Source: Takakia lepidozioides
Taxonomy: Eukaryota; Plantae; Bryophyta
Length of the DNA: 64,000 bases
Direction: 5' to 3'
Assembly: GCA_030704615.1 (NCBI GenBank)
Contig: CM060733.1
Coordinates: 58,280,001 to 58,344,000 of the forward strand
Shown here: positions 17,961-52,505 of the stretch, piece by piece
Position numbering within the stretch: the stretch's first letter is position 1
Layout of the letters: every line of letters starts with the position of its first letter
Notes under the pieces: model-generated
Databases searched by the model: none
Told to the model about the DNA's origin: nothing
Seen by the model: only the letters and a program-made list of their open reading frames with translations
Program-made: the position numbers and the translations under genes

Positions 17961-19109
17961 CCCGCTTCACCATCATGAGCAAGTATAAGCAAGACTAGGC
18001 CTAGCAAGAGCTGGAAAAAGAGCAACGTGGTAAGGAAACCTGGTCGACAAAGATGATAAGAGAGAGCAAGAGTACCGGGGCTCGAGAACAAAGCTAAGCG
18101 CAGGACAAAGATGATGAGAAGATGCGAAGCGTGCCTAGAGAGAAGAGCGATCACGCTTAAACAATGGCAGAGAACAGTCGAGCACCACGTGTCCATAAGA
18201 TCTGGATACCTGCCACCTGCCACCTTTTTGCTCTAAAAATACTAAAAGTAACTAGAGTTCTAGCTACTTTTCAGTTTTGACATACCAATCTTAAGTGAGT
18301 CGGAACACGATAAAAGATCGATCTTGCTCTGATCTCTGCATGGGCTCACGTACCTGCAGGGCAGAGCCAAAGGATGCGGGTGACAAAACCATGTACAGCG
18401 AGCATGCATGGACAAGCTTCCCTACTCGAATCGAGTCCGCCAGCATTCCCAATGACATGCAGCGCTATGCAAAAATAATGTTGTTGTGTTTCGCACCCAG
18501 GTCGCCCTGGAAGAAGGTGAGCCATTGCTAAGTTGTGGTTTGTTCACTTGCTTTGTCACCCGGCCTCTTCCAATCTCTCCCTCCCACTTTGGGAGGAACC
18601 GGTGCAGTCTCCCATTGTACATACCTCAGGATCGTTTTGAGTATGCACAGAGCATGGAGGAATTGGAACAACTTTGGAGGAGTTGATTCTGAAGCTGTGA
18701 AGTGAACTCGGTAGTTGATCCACGGTTACTCATAGTAAACCATTGAATGGGCTGGTGGACAGGGTGCAAGTTGATTGACGCGACGGTGGAGAGTTTTAAG
18801 CCTGTCAAAATCCATCGTCCGAGCCTCATCTAGTTTGTTGCATACACTGCATGCCCCGTACTGGGCTGGATTGAGTTTGGTTGATGGCATTCTGTGTTTG
18901 TGCATAGGGTTATGAAGGCCATAAGGTCGGAAACAGTGTCCCCACAGAGATTCATCGATGTGTGGGGATTTTTCGTCAAGTCAGGTAAGGAACGCCGATA
19001 TATGTAGATTGTGATAGATCCATGCCCATACAGGAACACTGACTTAACAGAGACGATTGAGTTGGAGAATTTATTGATCAATTGATGCATTCATCACCAT
19101 GCATTTAGC

Positions 19110-25349: not shown

Positions 25350-26650
25350 TCATCCTGGATACTCCTGCATTTGGCCTACATGTCCACAAGGGCATGTGCC
25401 AAGATGATGTCAGCATGGACCTTTCTGCCCCTTTCCAGCTCTGCCAGGCTGGCACACACATTGTAGACACAAATGAATGTGACCTAGTTGGGCTTCACCC
25501 CTTCCTGCATCATTCGCTCGATACTCCATGAGATCAAATCTTGTTTACCCATATTATTGAGCACTCCCTTTGCATCTTTGATGCTCCCACATTTGGCATA
25601 CATGTTGAGGACATGTTGACGAGCATAGTGTCCAGAACAATATCTGGTACAATTCCAGCTTTTAAGAGGTGAACGTGGAGACAACAACGTCACATTCATT
25701 TGCATTCTCAAAGCGTGTGCCAGCCTGGTAGACCTGGAAAAAGGCAAAGCGGAAAGATCCATCCTAGAAAACCAGATTTCAAGCACCAGACTAACAACGA
25801 GGGACCATGGATTGATAGCTACAAAAAACCTATTTGGGTCGATGGTGAATTGGAGCAGCAGGATGCAGCTAGGGGCAAATGTACAAAAACTGAAGATACA
25901 AACGAGGAGAAGCTCCGGAAAGAATATTTCTCAAACTCCAGTCAATGGTGGGACGTTGTAGGCAGAAAGATCCATCCTAGAGGACCAGATTTTCAGCACA
26001 AGTGCACCAACCAGCAACTATGGATTGGTAGCTATAAGAAACCTCCATGGGTAGATGGCCAATTGAAAACAGCAGCAACACAATTGTGTGGGTGACGCAT
26101 CCCCACGAGAACGACCTCCTCCATTGTACAATGTGGGGATGTGATGACAACTGAAATCTGCTGTTCAGAATTTGAGCCAAGGGGGCATATCAGCAGACTC
26201 CAAAACTTATGTCTGTCTCTTGAGGGAGTGTATCAAGATGACAGGCCTAGCAGAGGGAAAGCAGGTGCATGCACACATTATCCAACGTGGATTCAAGCCA
26301 GAGATCTTTCTACACAACACCCTTGTCAATATGTATGCCAAGTGCGGAGCGTTCTGGATGCACGTCTGGTGTTTGACAAAATGCATGAACGATACTGGAT
26401 CACATGGAACATAATGGTAGCAGCATATTCCAAGCAGGGATATTGTAGGGAGGCCTTGGACACCTACAAGCAAATGACGTTGGAAAATTGTCCCACCATT
26501 TACTGGAGTCTGCCGAATAATCCTTCCAAAGCTTCTCCACATATGTATTTTGGGTTATTGGATATTTGCTTATGTGGCCTCCTTGCTTATCCCCCTGAAT
26601 GTGATTCGCCTCTTCTGTTGTCCACTGCGCTGCAATTGGCATGAAAGTGT
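25350..26650. pseudogene. Rearranged pseudogene with OSB-type PDF motifs followed by PLS-class PPR repeats
   Basis: + strand: KIHPRKPDFKH..W..KPIWV, EYFSNSSQWWD..KIHPRGPDFQHK..LW..KPPWV, then TYVCLLRECI..GKQVHAHI..NTLVNMYAKCG/SVLDARLVFDKM..TWNIMVAAYSKQG. - strand: EKLWKDYSADSSKWWDN (26540-26487) and PPR pieces (25620-25350). Confidence 0.8.
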
Positions 26651-42561: not shown

Positions 42562-44213
42562 ATGGGGATTATAGGTGCGCTGTTGAAGCATCCGGAAGAC
42601 TTGCTCGCTCTGTTGAAGCTGAAGATGGCATCAGTGGCGGCCAGTGGAGCCATTCCGTCGGATCCTAACTTGGCATTCTGCTACCAGATGTTGAGACGCG
42701 TCTCTCGCGGGTTCTCAGTTGTGATCCAGCAGCTCGACCCTGGTCTACGCAATGCGGTTGGTCCTTTCGTTCTGAACTTGTGCCACTCTATACTTCAAAT
42801 TCTAAATTTTTCTTTATTGTCTTTCAATTGATTGTCTTTAGTATGTGATCTCAATTTTGAAATTCGATGAATTGATTCTGAAATCGGTGATGAAAACACA
42901 TGTCCGATGGTGGATTGGACAGCTCCCCTCTGGTGGTGCAGTTTCATAAAAGTTAGTGCCGACGAGAAGTTGGAGTGCTACTACGGACGATCAATGGAAA
43001 GTAACCTGGCATGTGCCTTGTTCAAAGACATGCATCTCTAACAGTTTGGGGTTGCCCTGTTTCGGCACTAGTGAGAGCAAGTTCAATCACAGCCGAGAGC
43101 ATCAAGATCCTTCTTTCCGGTGTGATGCTAATGGCAGACCGAAACTAAAACATGATATCTTGGAACCAGTATATAAGCCACTCTCCTGTCAACGTGTGTT
43201 CCAGTGATGCCAGAGTAATTCTTGGTCATAGTTTTGATGATGATTATTATGAAGGTTTGCTGAGGAGCAGACTTGTACGAAGGGGCTTATTTTTCCATCT
43301 TTGTATTAGTGCCTCTACTGAAAGTGGATTTTCACCAATAATTATGCAGGCTTGCGTCTTTTACCTGGTGGTGCGGGCGCTTAATGCAGTTGGTGAGCTT
43401 TTGTTTCCTTTCATTTGAAATTAGAATTCCCTTGACTTTTGCAAAACACACTCACTGGGCTTGCTACATGTCATTCCAGTCAAATGCATAGAGGAGGTTG
43501 GGCAGTTATGGTCCTTAGCTTTGCATGTGCTTGTTGCAATCACAAATCAGCAACACCTAGTTCTATTCGATGTATCACGCAGGGTTACCTGTGAATGTGG
43601 TATGACAGTTGAGAGCCGAGTCCCCATTGGATACCAAAAACAACTCAGCTGACAGCTTCTGTATTGCTTCCATCCAGGCGATGCAATAGTTTACAGTGGA
43701 TTTGAGTGCAGATTTTGAAGAGCTGGCTTTTAAAAGCATGATGCTGATGTTAGTGCTGCTACTGTACAAGTGGCTGTGTTTGCATTGCCAGTCCCTTAAT
43801 TACAGGACATTGGGTACCACCTGGTTTATACAATAAAGAGAGGTGGAGGAGAGATATGGAAGTAGGCGTAGATGATAACACTCTAGGCCTCCAATATTGC
43901 AACCTCATTTATGAGGGTGCTCTTGTGTTCTAGAGTGCTCTTTACGAAAGCACTTAAAGCAGCAAGAAATGTTAGAGCTTTGGTCGTTGTCCTGAGACCT
44001 TGAAAACAGAGCAGAAAGATGTGCAGTGGTCTTTCCAATGCTTGTGAAGAGCTCCTCTCATTTTTAAAAAGAGGAACTATGAGAGAGACAGAATGTGCTC
44101 TTAAATGTTGTTTGCCTCGAGATTTTCAAAGTTGGTAAACAGAGGTACAGGAAATTCCCTTGATGGGACTGAAGAGGGCGTCTCTCTGGTGAGAGTACCC
44201 TGGACAAAGAATC

Positions 44214-44263
<50 letters not shown>

Positions 44264-47200
44264 CCTAAAAGGAAGGGATGTTGCATGAACAGAGGATGAC
44301 ATCAGCATTCCAGTGGATGCCAAGGTGCCGATTCTGAAGGAGTTTCACAAACACATCAATGATCCGTCATGGCATTTCTCCTGTAAGCTTCAACTAAACT
44401 TTCACTCAGTAATATGATTCAGGGATATGTACTGTACCATCAACAATTTTGATTGGGATGAATGAAATGAAGTGAAAAGTAAGCGATAAGCATGTACAAG
44501 AGAGTCTGTTGGCCCATAGGTCTTGGATAAAGCAATCCTGGACACCACAAACACCTTAGCCTTACTGAGATATACTATCTCTGGAATTTTTACAACAACT
44601 CACAGCAGCTGCAATCATATGACTAAGCATGGTTGTGTCTGTTTATGGATGTGAGGGTAGGCGGGATGAATGACTACAAGGATTTAATGGATAAATTCCA
44701 TTTTGTATCCCATGCCTTGTTAGGCCTTCCCAAAGGGTGTGTTTCCTTACCTATGCTCCTATCCATGTACGTGTCTGTCTAGTATGAGCACCTTGGTTAC
44801 TGATGTAGAGCCAAAAAGAGATTCCAGAGAGGCACTACAAGGTTCAAAGTATGTTATGTATACCTACACGACAGTGACTCACAAGTCCACAATCAAGTTC
44901 ACAATCCTTTGCCACTACACTAAAGAGGCAATTTCCTAGGCTCAACGTAGAAGATGATTTAATGGCAATGATCCAGTCTGCAGATGAGATTAGGCTTTGG
45001 GCCTAATAAACAACAATGCCTGGCAAGTTTAAACAGCAGTGTCATACGTGACCACCTTGCAAGCCCTTAGATTAAAAATTAAGGGGGGCGACCATATTTT
45101 TGTTATTGATTTCTCCTTGTTCAGAAAGAGCAAAATTGAAAGTTACATCTAAGCAGACAGAAGATTCTAAAATTGGTGTGCAGATACCAAGAAGTGATTG
45201 AAGAAATTGCAGAACGCATGGGAGATGGGATGGCTATTTTCATTGCTTCTGAGGTAGGTCTCTTTTCTTTCAATTGTACCTCTACTGCAATTGCCCCATG
45301 TACCTGTAAAAAGAGGTAAAAGAAGGACGCTGACTGGAAACAGCATAATCATGGGACCTCCATTCTGTATATGAGAAAGCTTAATCTGCTGATGAGTCTG
45401 TTTACAGGGATGAGAATTCGCCTCAGAGTAGAATGATGAGGTTTCTTACTGCACTCCTGCTATATCCTCTAGATGGAAATCGATTCGACAAATGTGTCTG
45501 GTTGCACTGCCAGAGAAGAACGAAAGAATGAAACTTCACAATATACACCGGGGCCCACAGAGTGAGAGAGAGCCAGAATTAAAGACAGTTAATAACTCCA
45601 CCAGGAGAGCAAGAAAGCAGAAAAAGACATCATCTATGGGATTACCTGAGGGCCAAATAAATGGGAGATGGAAAGAATGAGAGAGCAACTTTATAACGTC
45701 TGTGGGAAGTTCAAAGAGCTTATGGTACAACAGAAAGCAATAAACATGAAATTGGGTCCTCAACAAGCAGCCTAAAAACTCGGATTCAACATGAGAGATT
45801 CTCTGAAGAGATGGAGAGGGGGAGAGTTATTATGTGTACAGGGGGTTCCAAGGGCTAACAAAAGAGAAATAAAATGAAATGGTACTTTATAACGTCCGTG
45901 GAAAGCTCCTAGAGCTTATGGGACAAAATGGAAGAAAATATGAGAGAGGAAACAAAACCAGAGCCAAAAATAAAACTATTGCTTGAGAGAGGAGAGGAAG
46001 AAAGCAAAAAAGAAATATTATAATCTCTGCAGGAGCCAAAAACCTTGTGGGACATGCAGTATATGGAAGAACAATGAAGAAAACCGCTGAAGAGCAAGTG
46101 GAGGAGACAAAGAAGAAATAATTTAAATAGCTTATAAGAGCATTTCCTACCTTCTGCTCTAAATTCTGTTTTGTCCATGGCAGCCCCAGAGGACCATGGG
46201 ACACGATAGAACAGTGAGGGAGAGAGAAGGTGCTGGTTTCAAGGCATTTTTACTATATGATTGTACAGGTGGAGACAGTAGCCGACTACGACGAGTATTG
46301 TCACTATGTGGCGGGGCTTGTAGGGTTGGGTCAATCGCGTCTTTTTTACGCCGGAGGTCTTGAAGATTTTGCTCCTGACATTCTTTCCAACTCCATGGGA
46401 TTATTTATCCAGGTACTGCCTGGAAGTCTCTCTTACTTGTATAAAGAGTCATGCAATGCATTTGTTTCAGTTCACATTTTTCATACTGCTGGCTGATGTA
46501 AGCCAAATAGAAGGCTGAGTGGTCAATCCTTTTCTTCCAAGATGCACTGGACAAAATAAAGGCCAAATCATTTTGACAGCAGTTACGTTCTGCAAACTTT
46601 ATGTAATCCTCCACTTTTATGGACTCGGACCATGCTGGAAGGTGATGGCAGAAGGTTCACCGCCAACAACCTCTCTACATCATTCACCAGTCCAGGTTGA
46701 TCAAAAGTGGCTTGAAAGGGGTGACTTCTTGATATACACCTGGGCCTTTATAGGACAATTTTACGGTCTGAATGAGGCCAGCATTCAGCTAGTGCTGACT
46801 GTGGTTTCCTGCTTGATTATCTCACAGGTAGCTTTTTAAAGCCAGATTTTGGTGGTTTCACATTTATTGTTAGACTCCTTCACAATTATATTAAGGCACA
46901 ATGGGGTTTGATGCTTTCTTCTGCTTGCATGGCTTCAGAAAACAAATATCATTAGAGATTACCTGGAAGATATCAACAAATTGCCGGCGCCTCGCATGTT
47001 TTGGCCACGTGAAATCTGGGGCAAATATGCAAAGAAACTTGAGGTGGGTGCTTAACAGCCCTTTCTGTCATCCTGACGTCAAGTTTCTTTTTCTTCTTCT
47101 TTTCTGTTTCTCATGATCTATTTTGAAGTAGTTCTTGGTTTGTTTGACCCTTGTCCCATGGGCTCTTTTGGTCCTCTGTGGACGTAATAAAGTTTCTCAC

Positions 47201-50200
47201 TTTCTGTCTTTCTCCTCTCCTGTAGTTGTTTCGTATGTCTTGTGGATGGAAGAAATTTTGTTCTTCTTCCTTTTCCTTTTTCTACTTCTTTCTCTGACAT
47301 CAGAAGAGAACTTATGGAACGTGTGAGGAAATCAGCCAATCTTACAGCAAAACTGCACCTCTTTCTGGAGACATTCTTGGTCCTCCATGACGATAGAATC
47401 TTCCGGCCCAATTACCTGCCTGCAGCTCTATCCCCCTCTCTTCCAAGGGCATTAACAACATCTAATGAGTACATTCTTCTAAGGGCATTGGGGAGGTTCA
47501 GGGTGGGCTCCCACAGTCTGCAGATAGAGACTGGTAGGTGGGACAACCTTCAATGGGAGGACTGCGTATGCCCCGCTTGTGCTTGGAACAACAGGGGAAT
47601 CGAAGTGAAGAAGATTTCTTCTTTCACTGCCCTTTTCACTATGAGGTCCGTGGGGGATTCAATTGTCTCTTCCGTGATACCCAATCTCTTATCATTACGA
47701 GGATCAAAAGTGCTTGGCAGCTCACTGCATGCGGCATTGACTCGTAGACAATCCCTTGAGCAATAGTTGCTTTTGGGCTGCTTGTGGAGGGGCTTCCTGC
47801 GGACGTTGTAAAGTTCCATTTCATTTCATTTCATTTCTCTTATCCCATAAGCTCTTTGAGCTTTCCAAGTACGTTATGAAGTACACCATTTCACTTCATT
47901 TCTGACTGCAATCGTAAGCTGCTAAGATTTGATGTTGCCCTGATGGTTCCATTGTGCTTTTGCCCAACCTTGTTTGAAACAAATGAACTATTCACATTTA
48001 AGTGGATTAAGGGCAGTATTGTAATCCTCAATAGGGACATGGGGGAGAACCTGGTAACTATTGTGGATTCAGATCCTCATGTGCTGTAGGCAAGTGATTT
48101 TACTGTTCCCAATCAATACTCTCCAAACATTGTGCTTGAAGGTGAAGCAGGCTTTAGGCTTGTTCAGGAATGCTTTTTACTCACTATTTGTGTTTGTTAC
48201 TGTGCTAATGCAGTAGCTGTAGCCTTGCAGGACTTTAAATATGAAGAAAATGCAGAAGCAGCAGTGAAGTGCTTGAATCAGATGATTACAAATGCTCTGT
48301 CGCATGCAACTGATTGTCTTCAATACATGGCTGCCATTGATAACCCTGGAAATCTCGTCTTTTGTGCCATTCCACAGGTGAGAGAGAAGAAGCTAGTTAT
48401 AAACCTGTGCATGTTGTAGCCTTGTAGTCAGAGACCCGCCTTGTCTGTTGATCTAGCAGAAAGAAGGGCAGATGGAAGGGCTTGCATGAAAGGTGAGTAC
48501 TGATGCTGTAGCCTTCTGGCCTGTCTATTTTGGACAGAGCAGAAGTGGGGCAAAGGGGAAAGGGGAACAAGAGGACAGCAGAATGAGGGTGAGTAATGTT
48601 GCTGAAGGCTTGACTTGAGTAGACCTACCCTTGTAGATAAAGTTGGTTTCCAGAATAGCAGCTCTTTACCGCGGTAGTCTGAAGGGACATGAGATGACGT
48701 TTCTGTAGCCTTGTGGCTATAGACCCAAATAAGAGGGAACAGCCACTACCTTTGTGAGGAGCTCACTGAAGGAGTTACCTTGATTTTAAACAGTTCGTTC
48801 GGGCTTTCCAGATTTCCTCTAGAAAGCCCTTCACACAAGCATCACCTGCTGTGTTTGATCTGCCCAGCAGTAAGACCCCAACAGGACCAGGCTTTAGGCT
48901 CAGCTGTGAGATTTTGAATCTGAGAGGGATAAAGAGAGGTCTGGGGGGAGGAAGAACAAGTGGGATAGGATGAAAACGTTCTTGCAGTTTGTTGCCACTG
49001 AAAGGGGTTGATCACAGATAATGGCTATGGGTACGCTGGCTATGTGCTACAACAACATCCAAGTCTTCAGACGAGTAGTTGAGATCAGGCGTGGTAAGTG
49101 ACTACATGAAATGGAGCAGTTGGTTACTTGTTTTATGCACTTTACACTGAAATTTGTGCTCTTGGCCATGAGTGATGTACTCAGGAAACCAATTTTTTCT
49201 TATGCTGAAGTACAGATAAGCATGGTTTAACCGGCACTTTACTCCTAGAGACTATTTGTAACTTTCTGTAGTGTAACCTAGCAAAAAGAGATATGAGCTC
49301 TTGGAAAACTCTGCACAACATTCGAGTCATGATTAGCGTCAAGTGAATGTAGTCCTAATTATCGAGCATCTTCTTTGGTACGGGGTTGTATGGGGATCAG
49401 CCCTCACAATCATACCTAATTTTTCATGATCATGATCTATAAGGTTGGACACATCAAGTCATCGAAGTTCAGAATCAATTACATTTTAACACTATGAGCC
49501 AAACAATTGAAACCTGTACAATAGTCACTGATTATCAACTCCTTGGATTGCAGGGCTGACAGCAAAGATATTGGAGGTTAAGACGATGCAAGATGTATAT
49601 GGAGCTTTTCTTGACTTCTCTTCCATACTGGCTACCAAGGCATACTTCATGCTATCACTGTCTCCATATTTCATTTTATTCTCACCCTCCCTCTCCACCT
49701 TTTTTCTCTTCAGCATGACATGTAGTGCAACCACAGCCATGGCGGGTTTGTGTGAAGTCTCCCCACAGTCCTAAGTTGTCAATGCCAGCCATGGGGCTTA
49801 CACAAATTGGCCCTACTAAATGGTGCCGGAAGAGTGAGAAGGGGATAGACATATCAATCGAGTGCATTAGAATGTACTCATATGACGTTGTTTGCCGTTA
49901 GCCTCGTGGCCATAGACCCCGTGCCCAGTTTGGTCAGAACAAAAGGGAATGGAAAGACCTTTCTGAGGGGCTCACTCTGGTAGTGCGACTTTACCTTTAT
50001 AGACAATTAGTTCGGGATTTCCAGATATCCTCTAGAATGCCCTTCACACACGCAAATTAGACCCCAAGAGGGCCAGGGCTTTAGGCTCAACCTCAAGATT
50101 TTGAAAGTTGGTGAACAGAGGTGCAAGGACAATGTTCTTGATTGTCCTGAAGAGGGTCACTCTCTGGTGAGAATACCCTGGACAATGTATCAGAAAATGG

Positions 50201-52505
50201 ATATTGTCTCTAGGCTCCCGCACATTGGGCAATTACAATCTCAGCGTACTGAAAGGATCACAGGCCCTGGACGCAGAAGACTGTACCTCAGCTCGAAAGA
50301 TATCGAATACAAAGCCATTGAAGCTGCTGACCACAGCCTATTGCACATCCAGGCCTAGACCATCGAGGGTGTGCACTGTTGACAGAAGAAGCCCTGCACG
50401 GTGTGCAGAGAACATGCGGATATTGAGCACCCTCCCCTGATCTCTTGTCCTAACCTCTACCTGCTCCACATAAGTCCCACGATCAGTGATCACGCTTGGC
50501 TGCAGTAATGAACGCTCTCTGCATCTGTTTACTTTTCAAAGGTAGGCTTCCCATCCCGAGTTTAAATTTCAGTCTAGTGCTGGGCCCTTCAGATCATCCT
50601 TAAGGTCCTCTCGCTCATGTCATAGACTGGAAACAAGTGAAGGTTTATGCCTAACTTCATTCAATCGGACAGTCTTTGGGCATCAGACATGACTTTGGTC
50701 ACATCCCCCTCCAGGTCAGCTTAGGGTCAACTCTTCTGGACTAATATTCAGGTACTTGACAATCTCTTCTCCCCTTTTCCGCCAAGACATAGCCTGTTTA
50801 ACAGAACGGTCTTACTTCCAAGAAATAGCGTTGATTAGTTTAAGGTATCTGGTATTCGGCATGCGATTCAACTGACCCCACCATCTGACCTTGAATTCAT
50901 CATGTTGAGAGCTTAAGGGAGGTATGCCAAATTCGCCCCGAACATCCACATCAACAGGACCGTCTTGCTTCCAAGAAATAGCATCGATTATTTTAGGGAA
51001 TCTGGTATTCGGCATGCGATTCAACTGACCCCACCATCTGACCTTGAATTCATCATGTTGAGAGCTTAAGGGAGGCTTGCCAAACTCACCCTGAACAGCC
51101 ACGTTAGCTGTTCTAGAGGAAGCCGACATGCTTTCTTTGAGCACGGCGACCTGAATGGATACTAAATACTTAGCCTGGTTGGAATTGTCGACCCTCGGGA
51201 GCAGATGCGTACTCCAAGGCCGGCCTAATAATGTTCCAAAGCATGGTCCTTTTAACTTCAGTATTAATCCCTCTGCAGTCAAAAAATTTAGTGAGACCCA
51301 AAGCTTTGCGTGTAGCTGATTGAATCACTTTCTGTATATGCGCATCCCAGTAACAGTTGGAGGAAAACTTGACTGCATTAGACTAGGGGTGGAAGTGTAA
51401 ATGGGAGAGTTTGTCGTGCAGCAGGTTAATATGAAGGACCCAGCTGCAACATTGACTCTCAAGCATGTGGATGAAATCCAACAACTTTGCAGTTTGCAGT
51501 TAAACAGCAGGCAGGCTATTCCTTTCTTTTCTGTGTACTCAGACACTGTCTAAGAAGCCTTAAAGTGACTGTGGATCCACTGGCCCCCTATCCTATTTGA
51601 TTTAATTGCAAATCGTTCATCCTATGTGAATTATGTGTGTGAATACCTCTGGATTTCTCTAGGATCTCTTCCTAGAGACATTCAGTTGTCACTGAAAAGC
51701 GGCTGCAGTCTGTCGGGATTGATGGCATGCTACTTTTGTATGCTTACAGGCGAGCCTCTACAAAAGAGAGCAAGCTCGCACATGAAGCTTTCTTGGTATG
51801 TGACCTGCACCCCCCTTCTTTGTTACTGTGATGTGTTTGAATAGTGGAACAAGCTTATCCTAAAACACGTCTGGTACTTTACATAGAAAGTTCACTGCCG
51901 TTGTAGTGAGCTCTTTTCCAGTACGCAAGTACCACAAGTACAGGGATATAAGCGCAGGTTATTGGGTCTGACTGAGAGAGTTTCTTGTCAGTGATGCCTA
52001 CCAAATATTTTTTATGGGAGGAAGATTCCGGTTCCAAAACTCTTGGTGTGCCATGTCGTGGAGCTTATTTGAAAGCGTAGTGTAGCAGCCTGACACTTCG
52101 AGTTCACAGGGGCATGTCAGAGATGTGCAAGTTTAATTTTGTCTCAATTTATTTATTTTTTAAATCTGATGTTAGGGATGTCCATTTTCATGAAGAAAGA
52201 AAAGCCATGGTTCTATCATTGACAGTGAAAAGGGACAACATAGTTACTCACCTGAACCACATCCTGGAAACCACTTGCAACTACTGGCCAGGGTATATCC
52301 CAATCCCTCCCTTTGTCGCCTGGCCTCTGCCCAACTGAATACATATCTACTATGCCAAGCATTCTTTAAGGAATTTGACTTCTCAGAGATTGACTGTTGA
52401 CATGCACCTTGTTCTGGTGTTTGTTTGTTGAATGCTTTGGTGCAGGCAGGGGCACTATTGGTACTCATGACAGCCATGCTCCTCATCGTTTGGAGGTCGG
52501 TGTAG
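42562..52505 (+). CDS. SQS: Squalene synthase-like protein (FDFT1/SQS family), 13 exons, 407 aa, divergent catalytic motifs
   Basis: Exons 42562-42756, 43350-43392, 44293-44382, 44661-44736, 45184-45253, 46269-46412, 46939-47043, 48231-48377, 49018-49093, 49554-49639, 51425-51510, 51750-51795, 52446-52505 total 1224 nt in frame. Motifs [41 protein letters not shown] and a C-terminal hydrophobic anchor. Introns 10 and 11 need GC donors. Confidence 0.93.
44080..44258 (-). mobile_element. Internally deleted LINE family A fragment with (GA)n in SQS intron 2
   Basis: [13 protein letters not shown] matches family A; (GA)n at 44219-44258, ending 35 bp before exon 3. Confidence 0.75.
45490..46000 (-). 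mobile_element. LINE family B 3'-end fragments in SQS intron 5
   Basis: Reverse complements of the family B 3' UTR (AAATGAAATGG..TTTATAACGTCCGTGGAAAGCTC..GAGCTTATGGGACAAAATGG). Confidence 0.75.
47295..47900 (+). mobile_element. LINE family B fragment in SQS intron 7
   Basis: [31 protein letters not shown] and a (CATTT)n tail; paralogous to 24125-24690. Confidence 0.88.
49870..51375 (-). mobile_element. LINE family A copy in SQS intron 10, with a ~140-bp internal tandem duplication and a captured gene fragment
   Basis: [40 protein letters not shown] and the family A 3' end; direct duplication 50815-50955 / 50968-51105. Confidence 0.88.
50287..50460 (-). pseudogene. ICE1: Captured exon of an ICE1/SCREAM-type bHLH gene (C-terminal ACT-like domain)
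   Basis: [57 protein letters not shown], bounded by CAG| and |GT; one stop. Confidence 0.85.

What the first reader, a model, noticed from the sequence alone, without database searches (positions are those of the whole stretch)
42562..52505. Intact squalene synthase-like gene with substitutions in three normally invariant catalytic elements: candidate neofunctionalised or pseudo-enzyme
Seen: 13 exons join into an open 407-aa frame with a membrane anchor. The FLAP reads SRGF instead of SRSF (GGG, 42709-42711). The first Asp-rich motif reads RALNAVEDD instead of RALDTVEDD (AAT, 43383-43385). The loop before helix K reads FRRVVEIRR instead of FRGVVK(M/I)RR (GAG, 49081-49083). Pocket residues also differ (equivalents of human V69A, L76V, L183Q, L211I), while YCHYVAG, IRDYLED and FCAIPQ are retained. 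Known: in human FDFT1, D80xxED84 binds Mg2+/diphosphate, S51-F54 is the FLAP and V314KIRK318 is the proposed NADPH-binding loop; Botryococcus SSL-1/2/3 paralogues split or redirect the two half-reactions. Inference: this paralogue may stop at or act on presqualene diphosphate, work without NADPH, use another prenyl chain, or be a non-catalytic partner, pointing to undescribed isoprenoid chemistry in a non-seed plant.
Basis: partly seen in the sequence, partly recalled or inferred. Interest (0 to 1): 0.85.

Follow-up and report, generated by a model that had tools for sequence, protein, structure and literature searches.

The report
Degenerate squalene synthase paralogue of mosses
This is an intact copy of the sterol-pathway enzyme squalene synthase from a moss-wide sister lineage, apparently undescribed, that has repeatedly lost its metal- and diphosphate-binding residues while staying under purifying selection, so it probably no longer makes squalene and has another role.

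Summary
A 13-exon, 407-aa squalene synthase (SQS) gene lies at 42562-52505 (+). It reads SRGF, NAVEDD and VVEIRR where 185 canonical land-plant SQS proteins have S (185/185), D (185/185) and K (183/185).

The gene is not an oddity of one genome. It is the earliest-branching member of a moss paralogue lineage, called clade B here (support 100/99). Clade B is sister to the canonical moss SQS clade A, and Physcomitrium patens has both.

- Every clade B member has a damaged first Asp-rich motif (N, Q or E for D80, or ENN in Sphagnum).
- Every member has a different flap substitution.
- The later-diverging (Bryopsida-type) copies also lose D223.
- Y171, F288, Q293, N215, R77 and the tail anchor are kept.
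- dN/dS is 0.11-0.17, and spliced transcripts exist in other mosses.

The best reading is a selectively maintained, catalytically impaired pseudo-SQS or an SQS with changed function. The window copy is the least degenerate member.

No paper describing the clade was found. I rate it a new variant of a known kind and moderately to highly interesting. The scan had not noted this clade before.

The parts
42562..42756 (+). Exon 1 (65 aa). Start codon at 42562. The flap reads VSRGF, with GGG at 42709-42711 (human S53 to G).
   Evidence: donor gttggt
43350..43392 (+). Exon 2. It holds the start of the first Asp-rich motif, which reads RALNAV, with AAT at 43383-43385 (human D80 to N; T81 to A).
44293..44382 (+). 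Exon 3. It completes the motif (E)DD, where E83, D84 and D85 are retained.
44661..44736 (+). Exon 4
45184..45253 (+). Exon 5
46269..46412 (+). Exon 6. YCHYVAG is present (Y171 retained). GLGQ carries L183 to Q, and GLFIQ carries L211 to I.
   Evidence: (PF00494, E 1.5e-5)
46939..47043 (+). Exon 7. [11 protein letters not shown] is present, so the second Asp-rich motif is intact.
   Evidence: (E 1.8e-4)
48231..48377 (+). Exon 8. It ends in FCAIPQ (F288 and Q293 retained).
49018..49093 (+). Exon 9. The JK loop reads FRRVVEIRR, with GAG at 49081-49083 (K315 to E) and CGA for G312 to R.
49554..49639 (+). Exon 10. It is followed by a non-canonical GC donor (gcatac), where Sphagnum and P. patens have GT.
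51425..51510 (+). Exon 11 of the 407-aa model, with GC donor gcaggc. It is 86 nt long, as in Sphagnum and P. patens, and the P. patens gene also has a GC donor here. The alternative is 51422-51498 with a GT donor, which gives 404 aa.
51750..51795 (+). Exon 12
52446..52505 (+). Exon 13. It holds the hydrophobic tail anchor and the TAG stop.

Best explanation
The gene is the orthologue, in an early-diverging moss, of a moss-wide SQS paralogue lineage (clade B). This lineage arose by duplication of the canonical SQS gene at or near the base of the mosses.

Shown. Clade B proteins keep the full SQS architecture and the ER tail anchor. They also keep the residues that line and act in the hydrophobic reaction channel (R77, Y171, Q212, N215, F288, Q293). 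They evolve under purifying selection. They have been released from the otherwise absolute constraint on the residues that hold Mg2+ and the substrate diphosphates. These are the flap S51-F54 and the first DxxED motif, plus D223 of the second motif in the later-diverging (Bryopsida-type) copies.

Inferred. Clade B proteins no longer work as squalene-producing enzymes. They are kept for another role at the ER membrane. The most likely role is a catalytically impaired pseudo-SQS that still binds an isoprenoid lipid in its channel and regulates or scaffolds sterol/triterpenoid metabolism.

The window copy is the slowest-evolving and least degenerate member (D80N, T81A, S53G, G312R, K315E; second motif intact). 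Residual or altered activity is therefore more plausible for it than for the Bryopsida-type copies.
For: Phylogeny. The window groups with Sphagnum balticum P0278, P. patens P0272 and three transcript-derived moss proteins at 100/99 support. This group is sister to canonical moss clade A at 93/90. The branching order (window, then Sphagnum, then the other mosses) mirrors the species tree. P. patens has both A (P0151) and B (P0272, which maps exactly onto genomic locus L001).

Motif decay.
- D80 is D in 185/185 canonical proteins. In clade B it is N, D, Q, Q, E, E, Q.
- T81 is changed in 7/7 clade B members.
- Sphagnum keeps D80 but reads ENN for EDD.
- D223 is N, N, H, N, N in the five Bryopsida-type members.
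- Nine B-type flaps all deviate from VSRSF, each at a different residue.
- The codons show at least three independent hits on motif 1.

Retention. Y171, Q212, N215, F288, Q293 and R77 are unchanged in all B members.

Shifted constraint. Of 161 ultra-conserved columns, 17 to 38 are changed in B members against 1-7 in canonical controls.

Selection. dN/dS is 0.107-0.171 for B pairs with unsaturated dS (window versus Sphagnum: 0.143 at dS 1.35). The comparable A pair gives 0.089.

Expression elsewhere. Uninterrupted 405-aa ORFs sit on 1.3-2.3 kb JGI and Logan contigs, while the genomic genes have 12 introns. These contigs are therefore spliced mRNAs.

Functional weight of the residues. Asp to Asn or Glu in the Asp-rich motifs abolishes SQS activity. 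The flap, Y171, F288 and 314-VKIRK-318 have assigned roles (PMC10378455). S51, S53, Y171, Q212 and both DXXED motifs are key, and the active algal SS-like enzyme LOS conserves them (PMC4823828).
Against: - No enzyme assay exists for any clade B member.
- In the window copy only one carboxylate (D80N) is lost, and Asn can still ligate Mg2+. Its second motif, E83, D84 and D85 are intact, so it may retain activity.
- Expression and splicing in this species are untested, and two of its twelve introns have GC donors.
- I could not establish that this genome has a canonical clade A copy. If it has none, this gene must make squalene.
- A non-catalytic role is inferred by analogy only. SQS is not known to form oligomers, so a partner-subunit mechanism has no direct support.
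- dS is saturated for deep comparisons.
- The 185 canonical sequences are biased towards angiosperms.
Confidence: 0.55

Rival explanations
1. Clade B is a neofunctionalised enzyme. It keeps a catalytic role but with remodelled metal and diphosphate binding. Examples would be another prenyl substrate or linkage, a substrate without diphosphate, or only one SQS half-reaction. It would make an undescribed moss isoprenoid.
For: Purifying selection acts on the clade, and the channel and cation-stabilising residues Y171, F288, Q293 and N215 are strictly retained. The Bryopsida-type B proteins share their own conserved replacements (GSVR(M/L)R, YCHF(T/S)AG, ITALG). This looks like a new constraint rather than decay. 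SQS duplicates have evolved new chemistry before, as in Botryococcus SSL-1/2/3 and LOS.
Against: The replacements at D80, in the flap and at D223 differ between members (N/Q/E, ENN, N/H). This is the signature of relaxed constraint, not of a newly selected catalytic site. The active SS-like enzyme checked (LOS) keeps both DXXED motifs and S51/S53. No candidate product is known.
Confidence: 0.25
2. The window gene is still a working squalene synthase. It would be a subfunctionalised isozyme, or the only SQS of this species, and its substitutions would be tolerated.
For: It is the least diverged B member, 64-68% identical to canonical SQS of all land-plant groups. The second DxxED motif, E83, D84, D85, Y171, F288 and Q212 are intact. 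No canonical copy has been seen in this genome, which could not be searched.
Against: D80, S53, T81, G312 and L183 are invariant in 185 canonical enzymes and all are changed here. Asp to Asn in the Asp-rich motifs abolishes activity. Its orthologues in other mosses have clearly lost catalytic carboxylates while a canonical paralogue coexists.
Confidence: 0.12
3. In this species the copy is a recently silenced or decaying gene whose frame has not yet been broken.
For: Two GC donors, one weak and unique to this genome (gcatac after exon 10). Several lineage-specific hits at invariant residues (S53G, L183Q, G312R, K315E). Long, repeat-bearing introns. No expression data.
Against: The 407-aa frame is open across 13 exons. 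This copy has the shortest terminal branch in clade B (0.19). dN/dS against Sphagnum is 0.143. The intron 11 GC donor is shared with the annotated P. patens gene.
Confidence: 0.08

Closest known systems
Canonical eukaryotic squalene synthase (FDFT1/ERG9/plant SQS; Pfam PF00494, EC 2.5.1.21)
   Same: It has the same fold family and the same 13-exon plant gene structure. It has a C-terminal tail anchor and is 60-68% identical to land-plant SQS. Y171, Q212, N215, D219-D223, F288 and Q293 are present.
   Different: S53G, D80N, T81A, L183Q, G312R and K315E fall at positions that are invariant in 185 canonical enzymes. The gene belongs to a separate paralogue clade.
Arabidopsis thaliana SQS2 (Busquets et al. 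2008, cited in PMC6508512)
   Same: It is a plant SQS duplicate that sits beside an active SQS1 and is reported to lack SQS activity (called a pseudogene in PMC6508512). Two sequences in my canonical set read S for the conserved F288. From memory this is the SQS2-type change, but I did not check which sequences they are.
   Different: It is a young, Brassicaceae-level duplicate hit at a different residue. The moss clade is ancient, spans Sphagnum to the Bryopsida-type mosses, is under purifying selection, and has its damage at the Mg2+/diphosphate sites.
Botryococcus braunii SS-like enzymes SSL-1/2/3 and LOS (PMC4823828)
   Same: They are SQS duplicates that left sterol metabolism for another role.
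   Different: They are algal and of independent origin. They are active enzymes. LOS and LSS conserve the flap serines, both DXXED motifs and the NADPH residues. SSL-1 and SSL-3 lack the membrane anchor, whereas moss clade B keeps the anchor and loses the motifs.
Catalytically inactive prenyltransferase paralogues that act as partner subunits (GPP synthase small subunit; NgBR/Nus1 of cis-prenyltransferase). This comparison rests on my own knowledge and was not tested here.
   Same: They are isoprenoid-enzyme duplicates that lost Asp-rich catalytic motifs yet are conserved because they modulate an active paralogue.
   Different: Those families are obligate dimers. SQS is not known to oligomerise, and no interaction was tested here.

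Membership tests
SQS/PSY superfamily, eukaryotic SQS branch (PF00494) | Match to the PF00494 profile and to solved SQS structures | tested here: met
   Exons 6, 7 and 8 hit PF00494 at E 1.5e-5, 1.8e-4 and 6.9e-3. Exon 1 matches the flap region of T. cruzi and human SQS. The orthologue P0278 matches human SQS at E 3e-87.
SQS/PSY superfamily, eukaryotic SQS branch (PF00494) | Placement inside land-plant SQS in a tree | tested here: met
   The gene nests within bryophyte SQS, in a moss clade.
Catalytically competent squalene synthase (EC 2.5.1.21) | First DxxED motif (human D80, E83, D84) | tested here: not met
   The window reads N77-A-V-E-D-D, whereas D80 is D in 185/185 canonical proteins.
Catalytically competent squalene synthase (EC 2.5.1.21) | Second DxxED motif (D219-D223) with N215 and R218 | tested here: met
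   [11 protein letters not shown] is intact in the window. It is lost in the Bryopsida-type clade B members.
Catalytically competent squalene synthase (EC 2.5.1.21) | Flap S51-R52-S53-F54 | tested here: not met
   The window reads SRGF, whereas S53 is S in 185/185 canonical proteins.
Catalytically competent squalene synthase (EC 2.5.1.21) | Y171, Q212, F288 and Q293 | tested here: met
   All four are retained.
Catalytically competent squalene synthase (EC 2.5.1.21) | JK loop / proposed NADPH site, G312 and V314-K315-I-R-K/R318 | tested here: not met
   The window reads R-V-V-E-I-R-R. G312 is 185/185 and K315 is 183/185 in canonical proteins. The role of this loop is only proposed.
Catalytically competent squalene synthase (EC 2.5.1.21) | Conversion of FPP plus NADPH to squalene; rescue of erg9 | not testable with these tools
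   This needs an experiment.
Moss SQS-like clade B (defined here) | Monophyly with Sphagnum P0278, P. patens P0272, P0273, P0274 and P0285, apart from canonical moss clade A | tested here: met
   Support is 100/99. In the clade B profile search, B members score 785-846 bits against at most 631 bits for single-copy canonical proteins.
Moss SQS-like clade B (defined here) | T81 replaced, at least one flap residue replaced, and at least one carboxylate of motif 1 lost | tested here: met
   The window has A78, G50 and N77 in its own numbering. All seven members fit.
Botryococcus-type SS-like enzymes | Common origin with the algal SSL genes; retention of catalytic motifs while one half-reaction changes | tested here: not met
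   Clade B arises inside the mosses. Its motifs are degenerate, whereas the active algal SS-like enzyme LOS keeps them. The SSL sequences themselves were not aligned here.
Pseudogene | Broken frame, or neutral evolution (dN/dS near 1) | tested here: not met
   The frame is open. dN/dS against Sphagnum is 0.143.
Pseudogene | No transcription or faulty splicing in this species | not testable with these tools

The most novel reading that the evidence does not exclude
Clade B is an ancient family derived from squalene synthase and conserved across mosses. It would have a function of its own. One possibility is an enzyme with a remodelled metal site that makes an undescribed isoprenoid. The other is a lipid-sensing pseudoenzyme that controls sterol and triterpenoid flux. 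Either would be a new functional class within the SQS/PSY family, and it could be tested directly in Physcomitrium patens.
Probability: 0.35. Interest if true: 0.85.

Novelty: new variant of a known kind. Interest (0 to 1): 0.66.

Why it matters
Squalene synthase is the committed step to sterols and triterpenoids and is one of the most conserved enzymes of eukaryotic lipid metabolism. This work points to a second SQS-derived protein in mosses. It has been kept under purifying selection since around the base of the moss lineage while its Mg2+/diphosphate-binding residues decayed in different ways in each lineage. That indicates a conserved function other than making squalene, either regulation of the pathway or new chemistry. 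It also warns annotators that genes labelled "squalene synthase" in moss genomes (for example UniProt A0A7I4FQR3 and the Sphagnum gene models) are probably not isozymes. This matters for metabolic engineering of P. patens as a terpenoid chassis. The family can be tested directly by knockout and assay in P. patens.

Tried and rejected
Expression, splicing and raw-read support in this species remain untested.

2. The joined 407-aa model has no reference, so it was never sent to a search, fold or look-up tool. Searches were run exon by exon by reference or with homologues that the tools returned. Exons were joined only inside local scripts that read coordinates from window.fa, for alignment, tree and dN/dS.

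3. The first fragment alignment, A1, was misaligned and discarded. A3 had one misplaced stretch, which was fixed in A4.

4. An exact look-up of the exon 1 read-through ORF (42562-42828) was not on record. The species could not be identified this way.

5. My first 404-aa join (exon 11 at 51422-51498) was set aside. The 86-nt exon 11 was preferred after comparison with the Sphagnum and P. patens genes.

6. The search of earlier findings by sequence came back blank, which means nothing.

7. Four literature searches for a moss SQS-like gene or SQS paralogue found nothing relevant.

8. The window's own protein did not appear in either profile search.

9. AU tests did not firmly exclude a duplication older than the moss-liverwort split. 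A plus liverworts gave p = 0.06 and B plus liverworts gave p = 0.04.

10. Complex prediction for an A-B pair was considered and not run. There is no prior evidence that SQS oligomerises, and a full-length clade A and clade B pair from one species was not to hand.

11. A weak tblastn hit at 18462-18518 (E 0.91) was dismissed as chance.
Full report
**1. The observation**

The region 42562-52505 (+) holds a 13-exon gene. Translating the stop-free stretches and running tblastn with Marchantia SQS locate every exon. The boundaries were read from the sequence and checked by script.

My first join (51422-51498, GT donor) gave 404 aa. The 86-nt exon 11 is preferred for two reasons. It matches the exon length in the Sphagnum balticum and Physcomitrium patens orthologues. 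Its GC donor (gcaggc) is mirrored by a GC donor (gcaagc) at the same intron of the annotated P. patens gene. Intron 10 has a second, weak GC donor (gcatac) that the other two species lack.

The three flagged codons are in frame. GGG 42709-11 gives SRGF, AAT 43383-85 gives NAVEDD, and GAG 49081-83 gives VVEIRR. Exons 6-8 hit PF00494. Exon 1 aligns to the flap region of solved SQS structures. The C-terminal 19 residues form the most hydrophobic window of the protein.

The joined model has no reference, so no search or fold was run with it. Searches were done exon by exon by reference, and joining was done only inside local scripts.

**2. Are the positions really invariant?**

I aligned 185 canonical land-plant SQS proteins (380-480 aa) returned. 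Human numbering was fixed from the alignment to PDB 3asx/3vj8.

| Human position | Canonical residue | Count | Window |
|---|---|---|---|
| S53 | S | 185/185 | G |
| D80 | D | 185/185 | N |
| T81 | T | 185/185 | A |
| L76 | L | 185/185 | V |
| L183 | L | 184/184 | Q |
| L211 | L | 185/185 | I |
| G312 | G | 185/185 | R |
| K315 | K | 183/185 | E |

Of 161 columns that are at least 97% conserved, the window differs at 17. Canonical moss, liverwort, lycophyte, fern and gymnosperm controls differ at 1-7.

**3. What the gene is**

- A phmmer search with exon 1 (collected) returned short genomic ORFs that are 74-82% identical but carry odd flaps (SGSF, TPSF, GQSF).
- One of them lies on P. patens WGS contigs (L001-L003). 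The runs SRR191864 and SRR3099021 are P. patens according to PMC5021289 and PMC13672439.
- tblastn showed an intact 13-exon SQS-like gene there, with QAVEDD and DYLEN.
- A profile built from canonical sequences plus the window and P. patens exons given by reference (A4) retrieved the full-length members. A second profile of those members (A5) confirmed them. They are P. patens P0272 (UniProt A0A7I4FQR3), Sphagnum balticum P0278, and the JGI/Logan proteins P0273, P0274, P0285 and P0324.
- In the A5 search these members score 785-846 bits. Apart from three 665-734-aa Brassica gene models, which look like fused tandem SQS copies, every canonical SQS scores at most 636 bits.

An IQ-TREE tree (LG+C20+F+G4) gives two moss clades.

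- Clade A is canonical and has support 100/99.
- Clade B has support 100/99. It holds the window as the first branch, then Sphagnum, then the other mosses on a long stem (0.36).
- A and B are sisters at 93/90.

AU tests disfavour placing either clade with the liverworts (p = 0.06 and 0.04). A somewhat older duplication is therefore not firmly excluded. P. patens carries both A (P0151) and B (P0272), so B is a true paralogue. The window is 70% identical to Sphagnum B and 60-67% identical to everything else.

The first-branching position, together with 5084 windows of 64 kb (about 325 Mb), would fit Takakia. I could not verify the species.

**4. The clade-wide pattern**

Every B member deviates in the elements that hold Mg2+ and the substrate diphosphates, and the replacements differ between members.

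- D80 is N (window), D (Sphagnum, which instead reads ENN for E83-D84-D85), Q (three members) or E (two members, plus the partial locus L004).
- T81 is replaced in 7/7.
- D223 is N, N, H, N, N in the five Bryopsida-type members. One member also has R218S and D219N.
- Nine B-type flaps (VSRGF, VSHSL, VSGSF, VTRSF, VTPSF, VGQSF, TCRSF, VNRSF, ASRSF) each alter a different residue of the otherwise invariant VSRSF.
- The codons imply at least three independent hits on motif 1: GAT to AAT in the window, GAY to GAA and then CAA in the Bryopsida-type members, and GAY-GAY to AAC-AAC in Sphagnum.

In contrast, R77, Y171, Q212, N215, F288 and Q293 are unchanged in all members, and the tail anchor is present in every full-length member. 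The Bryopsida-type B proteins also share their own conserved replacements, such as GSVR(M/L)R and YCHF(T/S)AG.

**5. Selection and expression**

Nei-Gojobori dN/dS is 0.107-0.171 for B pairs with unsaturated dS. The window against Sphagnum gives 0.143 at dS 1.35. The comparable A pair gives 0.089. Clade B is therefore constrained, with the constraint relaxed roughly 1.5- to 2-fold relative to A.

Four contigs from JGI metatranscriptomes and a Logan run carry uninterrupted 405-aa B ORFs. The genomic genes have 12 introns, so these contigs are spliced mRNAs.

**6. Mechanism**

The literature gives these points.

- The two Asp-rich motifs bind the diphosphates through Mg2+.
- Asp to Asn or Glu abolishes activity.
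- Residues 50-54 form the flap.
- Y171 and F288 act in the first and second half-reactions.
- 314-VKIRK-318 is only a proposed NADPH site (PMC10378455).
- S51, S53, Y171, Q212 and both DXXED motifs are key, and the active algal SS-like enzyme LOS conserves them (PMC4823828).

The steps that are shown are paralogy, the motif losses, the retention of channel residues, purifying selection, and transcripts in other mosses.

The inference is that clade B no longer ionises prenyl diphosphates as SQS does and is kept for another role. I consider a catalytically impaired, lipid-binding or regulatory pseudo-SQS most likely. My estimate for this whole reading is 0.55. I put about 0.9 on clade membership and selection, and about 0.7 on loss of canonical activity.

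The rivals are:
- a remodelled enzyme with new chemistry (0.25);
- a still-active isozyme, which is most plausible for this least-degenerate copy (0.12);
- a recently silenced copy in this species (0.08).

**7. Comparison and novelty**

The closest precedents are Arabidopsis SQS2, a young duplicate reported to lack SQS activity, and the Botryococcus SS-like enzymes, which are active and whose checked member LOS keeps the motifs. By analogy from my own knowledge, inactive prenyltransferase partner subunits are also comparable. Four literature searches found no description of a moss SQS-like clade. Subscription journals are not covered by those searches. I rate the finding as a new variant of a known kind.

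The analogy to split half-reactions is not supported, and the specific biochemical options remain open.

Noticed in passing
window 49640-49645 and 51511-51516; L001 4584-4589: Two consecutive introns of the window gene have GC donors. The intron 11 GC donor is shared with the P. patens orthologue, while Sphagnum has GT there. This looks like a GC-AG intron conserved across distant mosses.
   Followed up: partly
L001 2222-2227: The annotated P. patens clade B protein (P0272) uses the downstream AG of a tandem acceptor (gcagaag). This drops the Glu equivalent to human E83, so QAV-DD is read instead of QAVEDD. It could be alternative NAGNAG splicing or an annotation choice.
   Followed up: partly
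window 44214-44258: An (AG)22 microsatellite lies 35 bp upstream of the exon 3 acceptor.
   Followed up: no
window 50800-51102: A 153-bp unit is repeated twice in tandem (90% match) inside intron 10.
   Followed up: no
window 47191-47766: A long open frame (174-191 aa) lies inside intron 7 on the gene's strand. It has no Pfam match and may be a remnant of a mobile element.
   Followed up: partly
window 26141-26641: This ORF carries a PPR repeat (PF01535, E 7e-9). It overlaps the earlier scan note on a PLS-PPR gene at 25350-26650.
   Followed up: partly
proteins P0002, P0004, P0037: Several annotated plant proteins carry duplicated copies of SQS exon 1. In P0002 these are fused to an unrelated C-terminal region that I did not identify. 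The scan note s1-462631 reports an SQS exon 1 next to a PPR-DYW gene in this genome. Stray copies of exon 1 seem to recur.
   Followed up: no
proteins P0322, P0323, P0270: Brassica gene models of 665-734 aa score about twice as high as a single SQS. They are probably tandem SQS genes fused by annotation.
   Followed up: no
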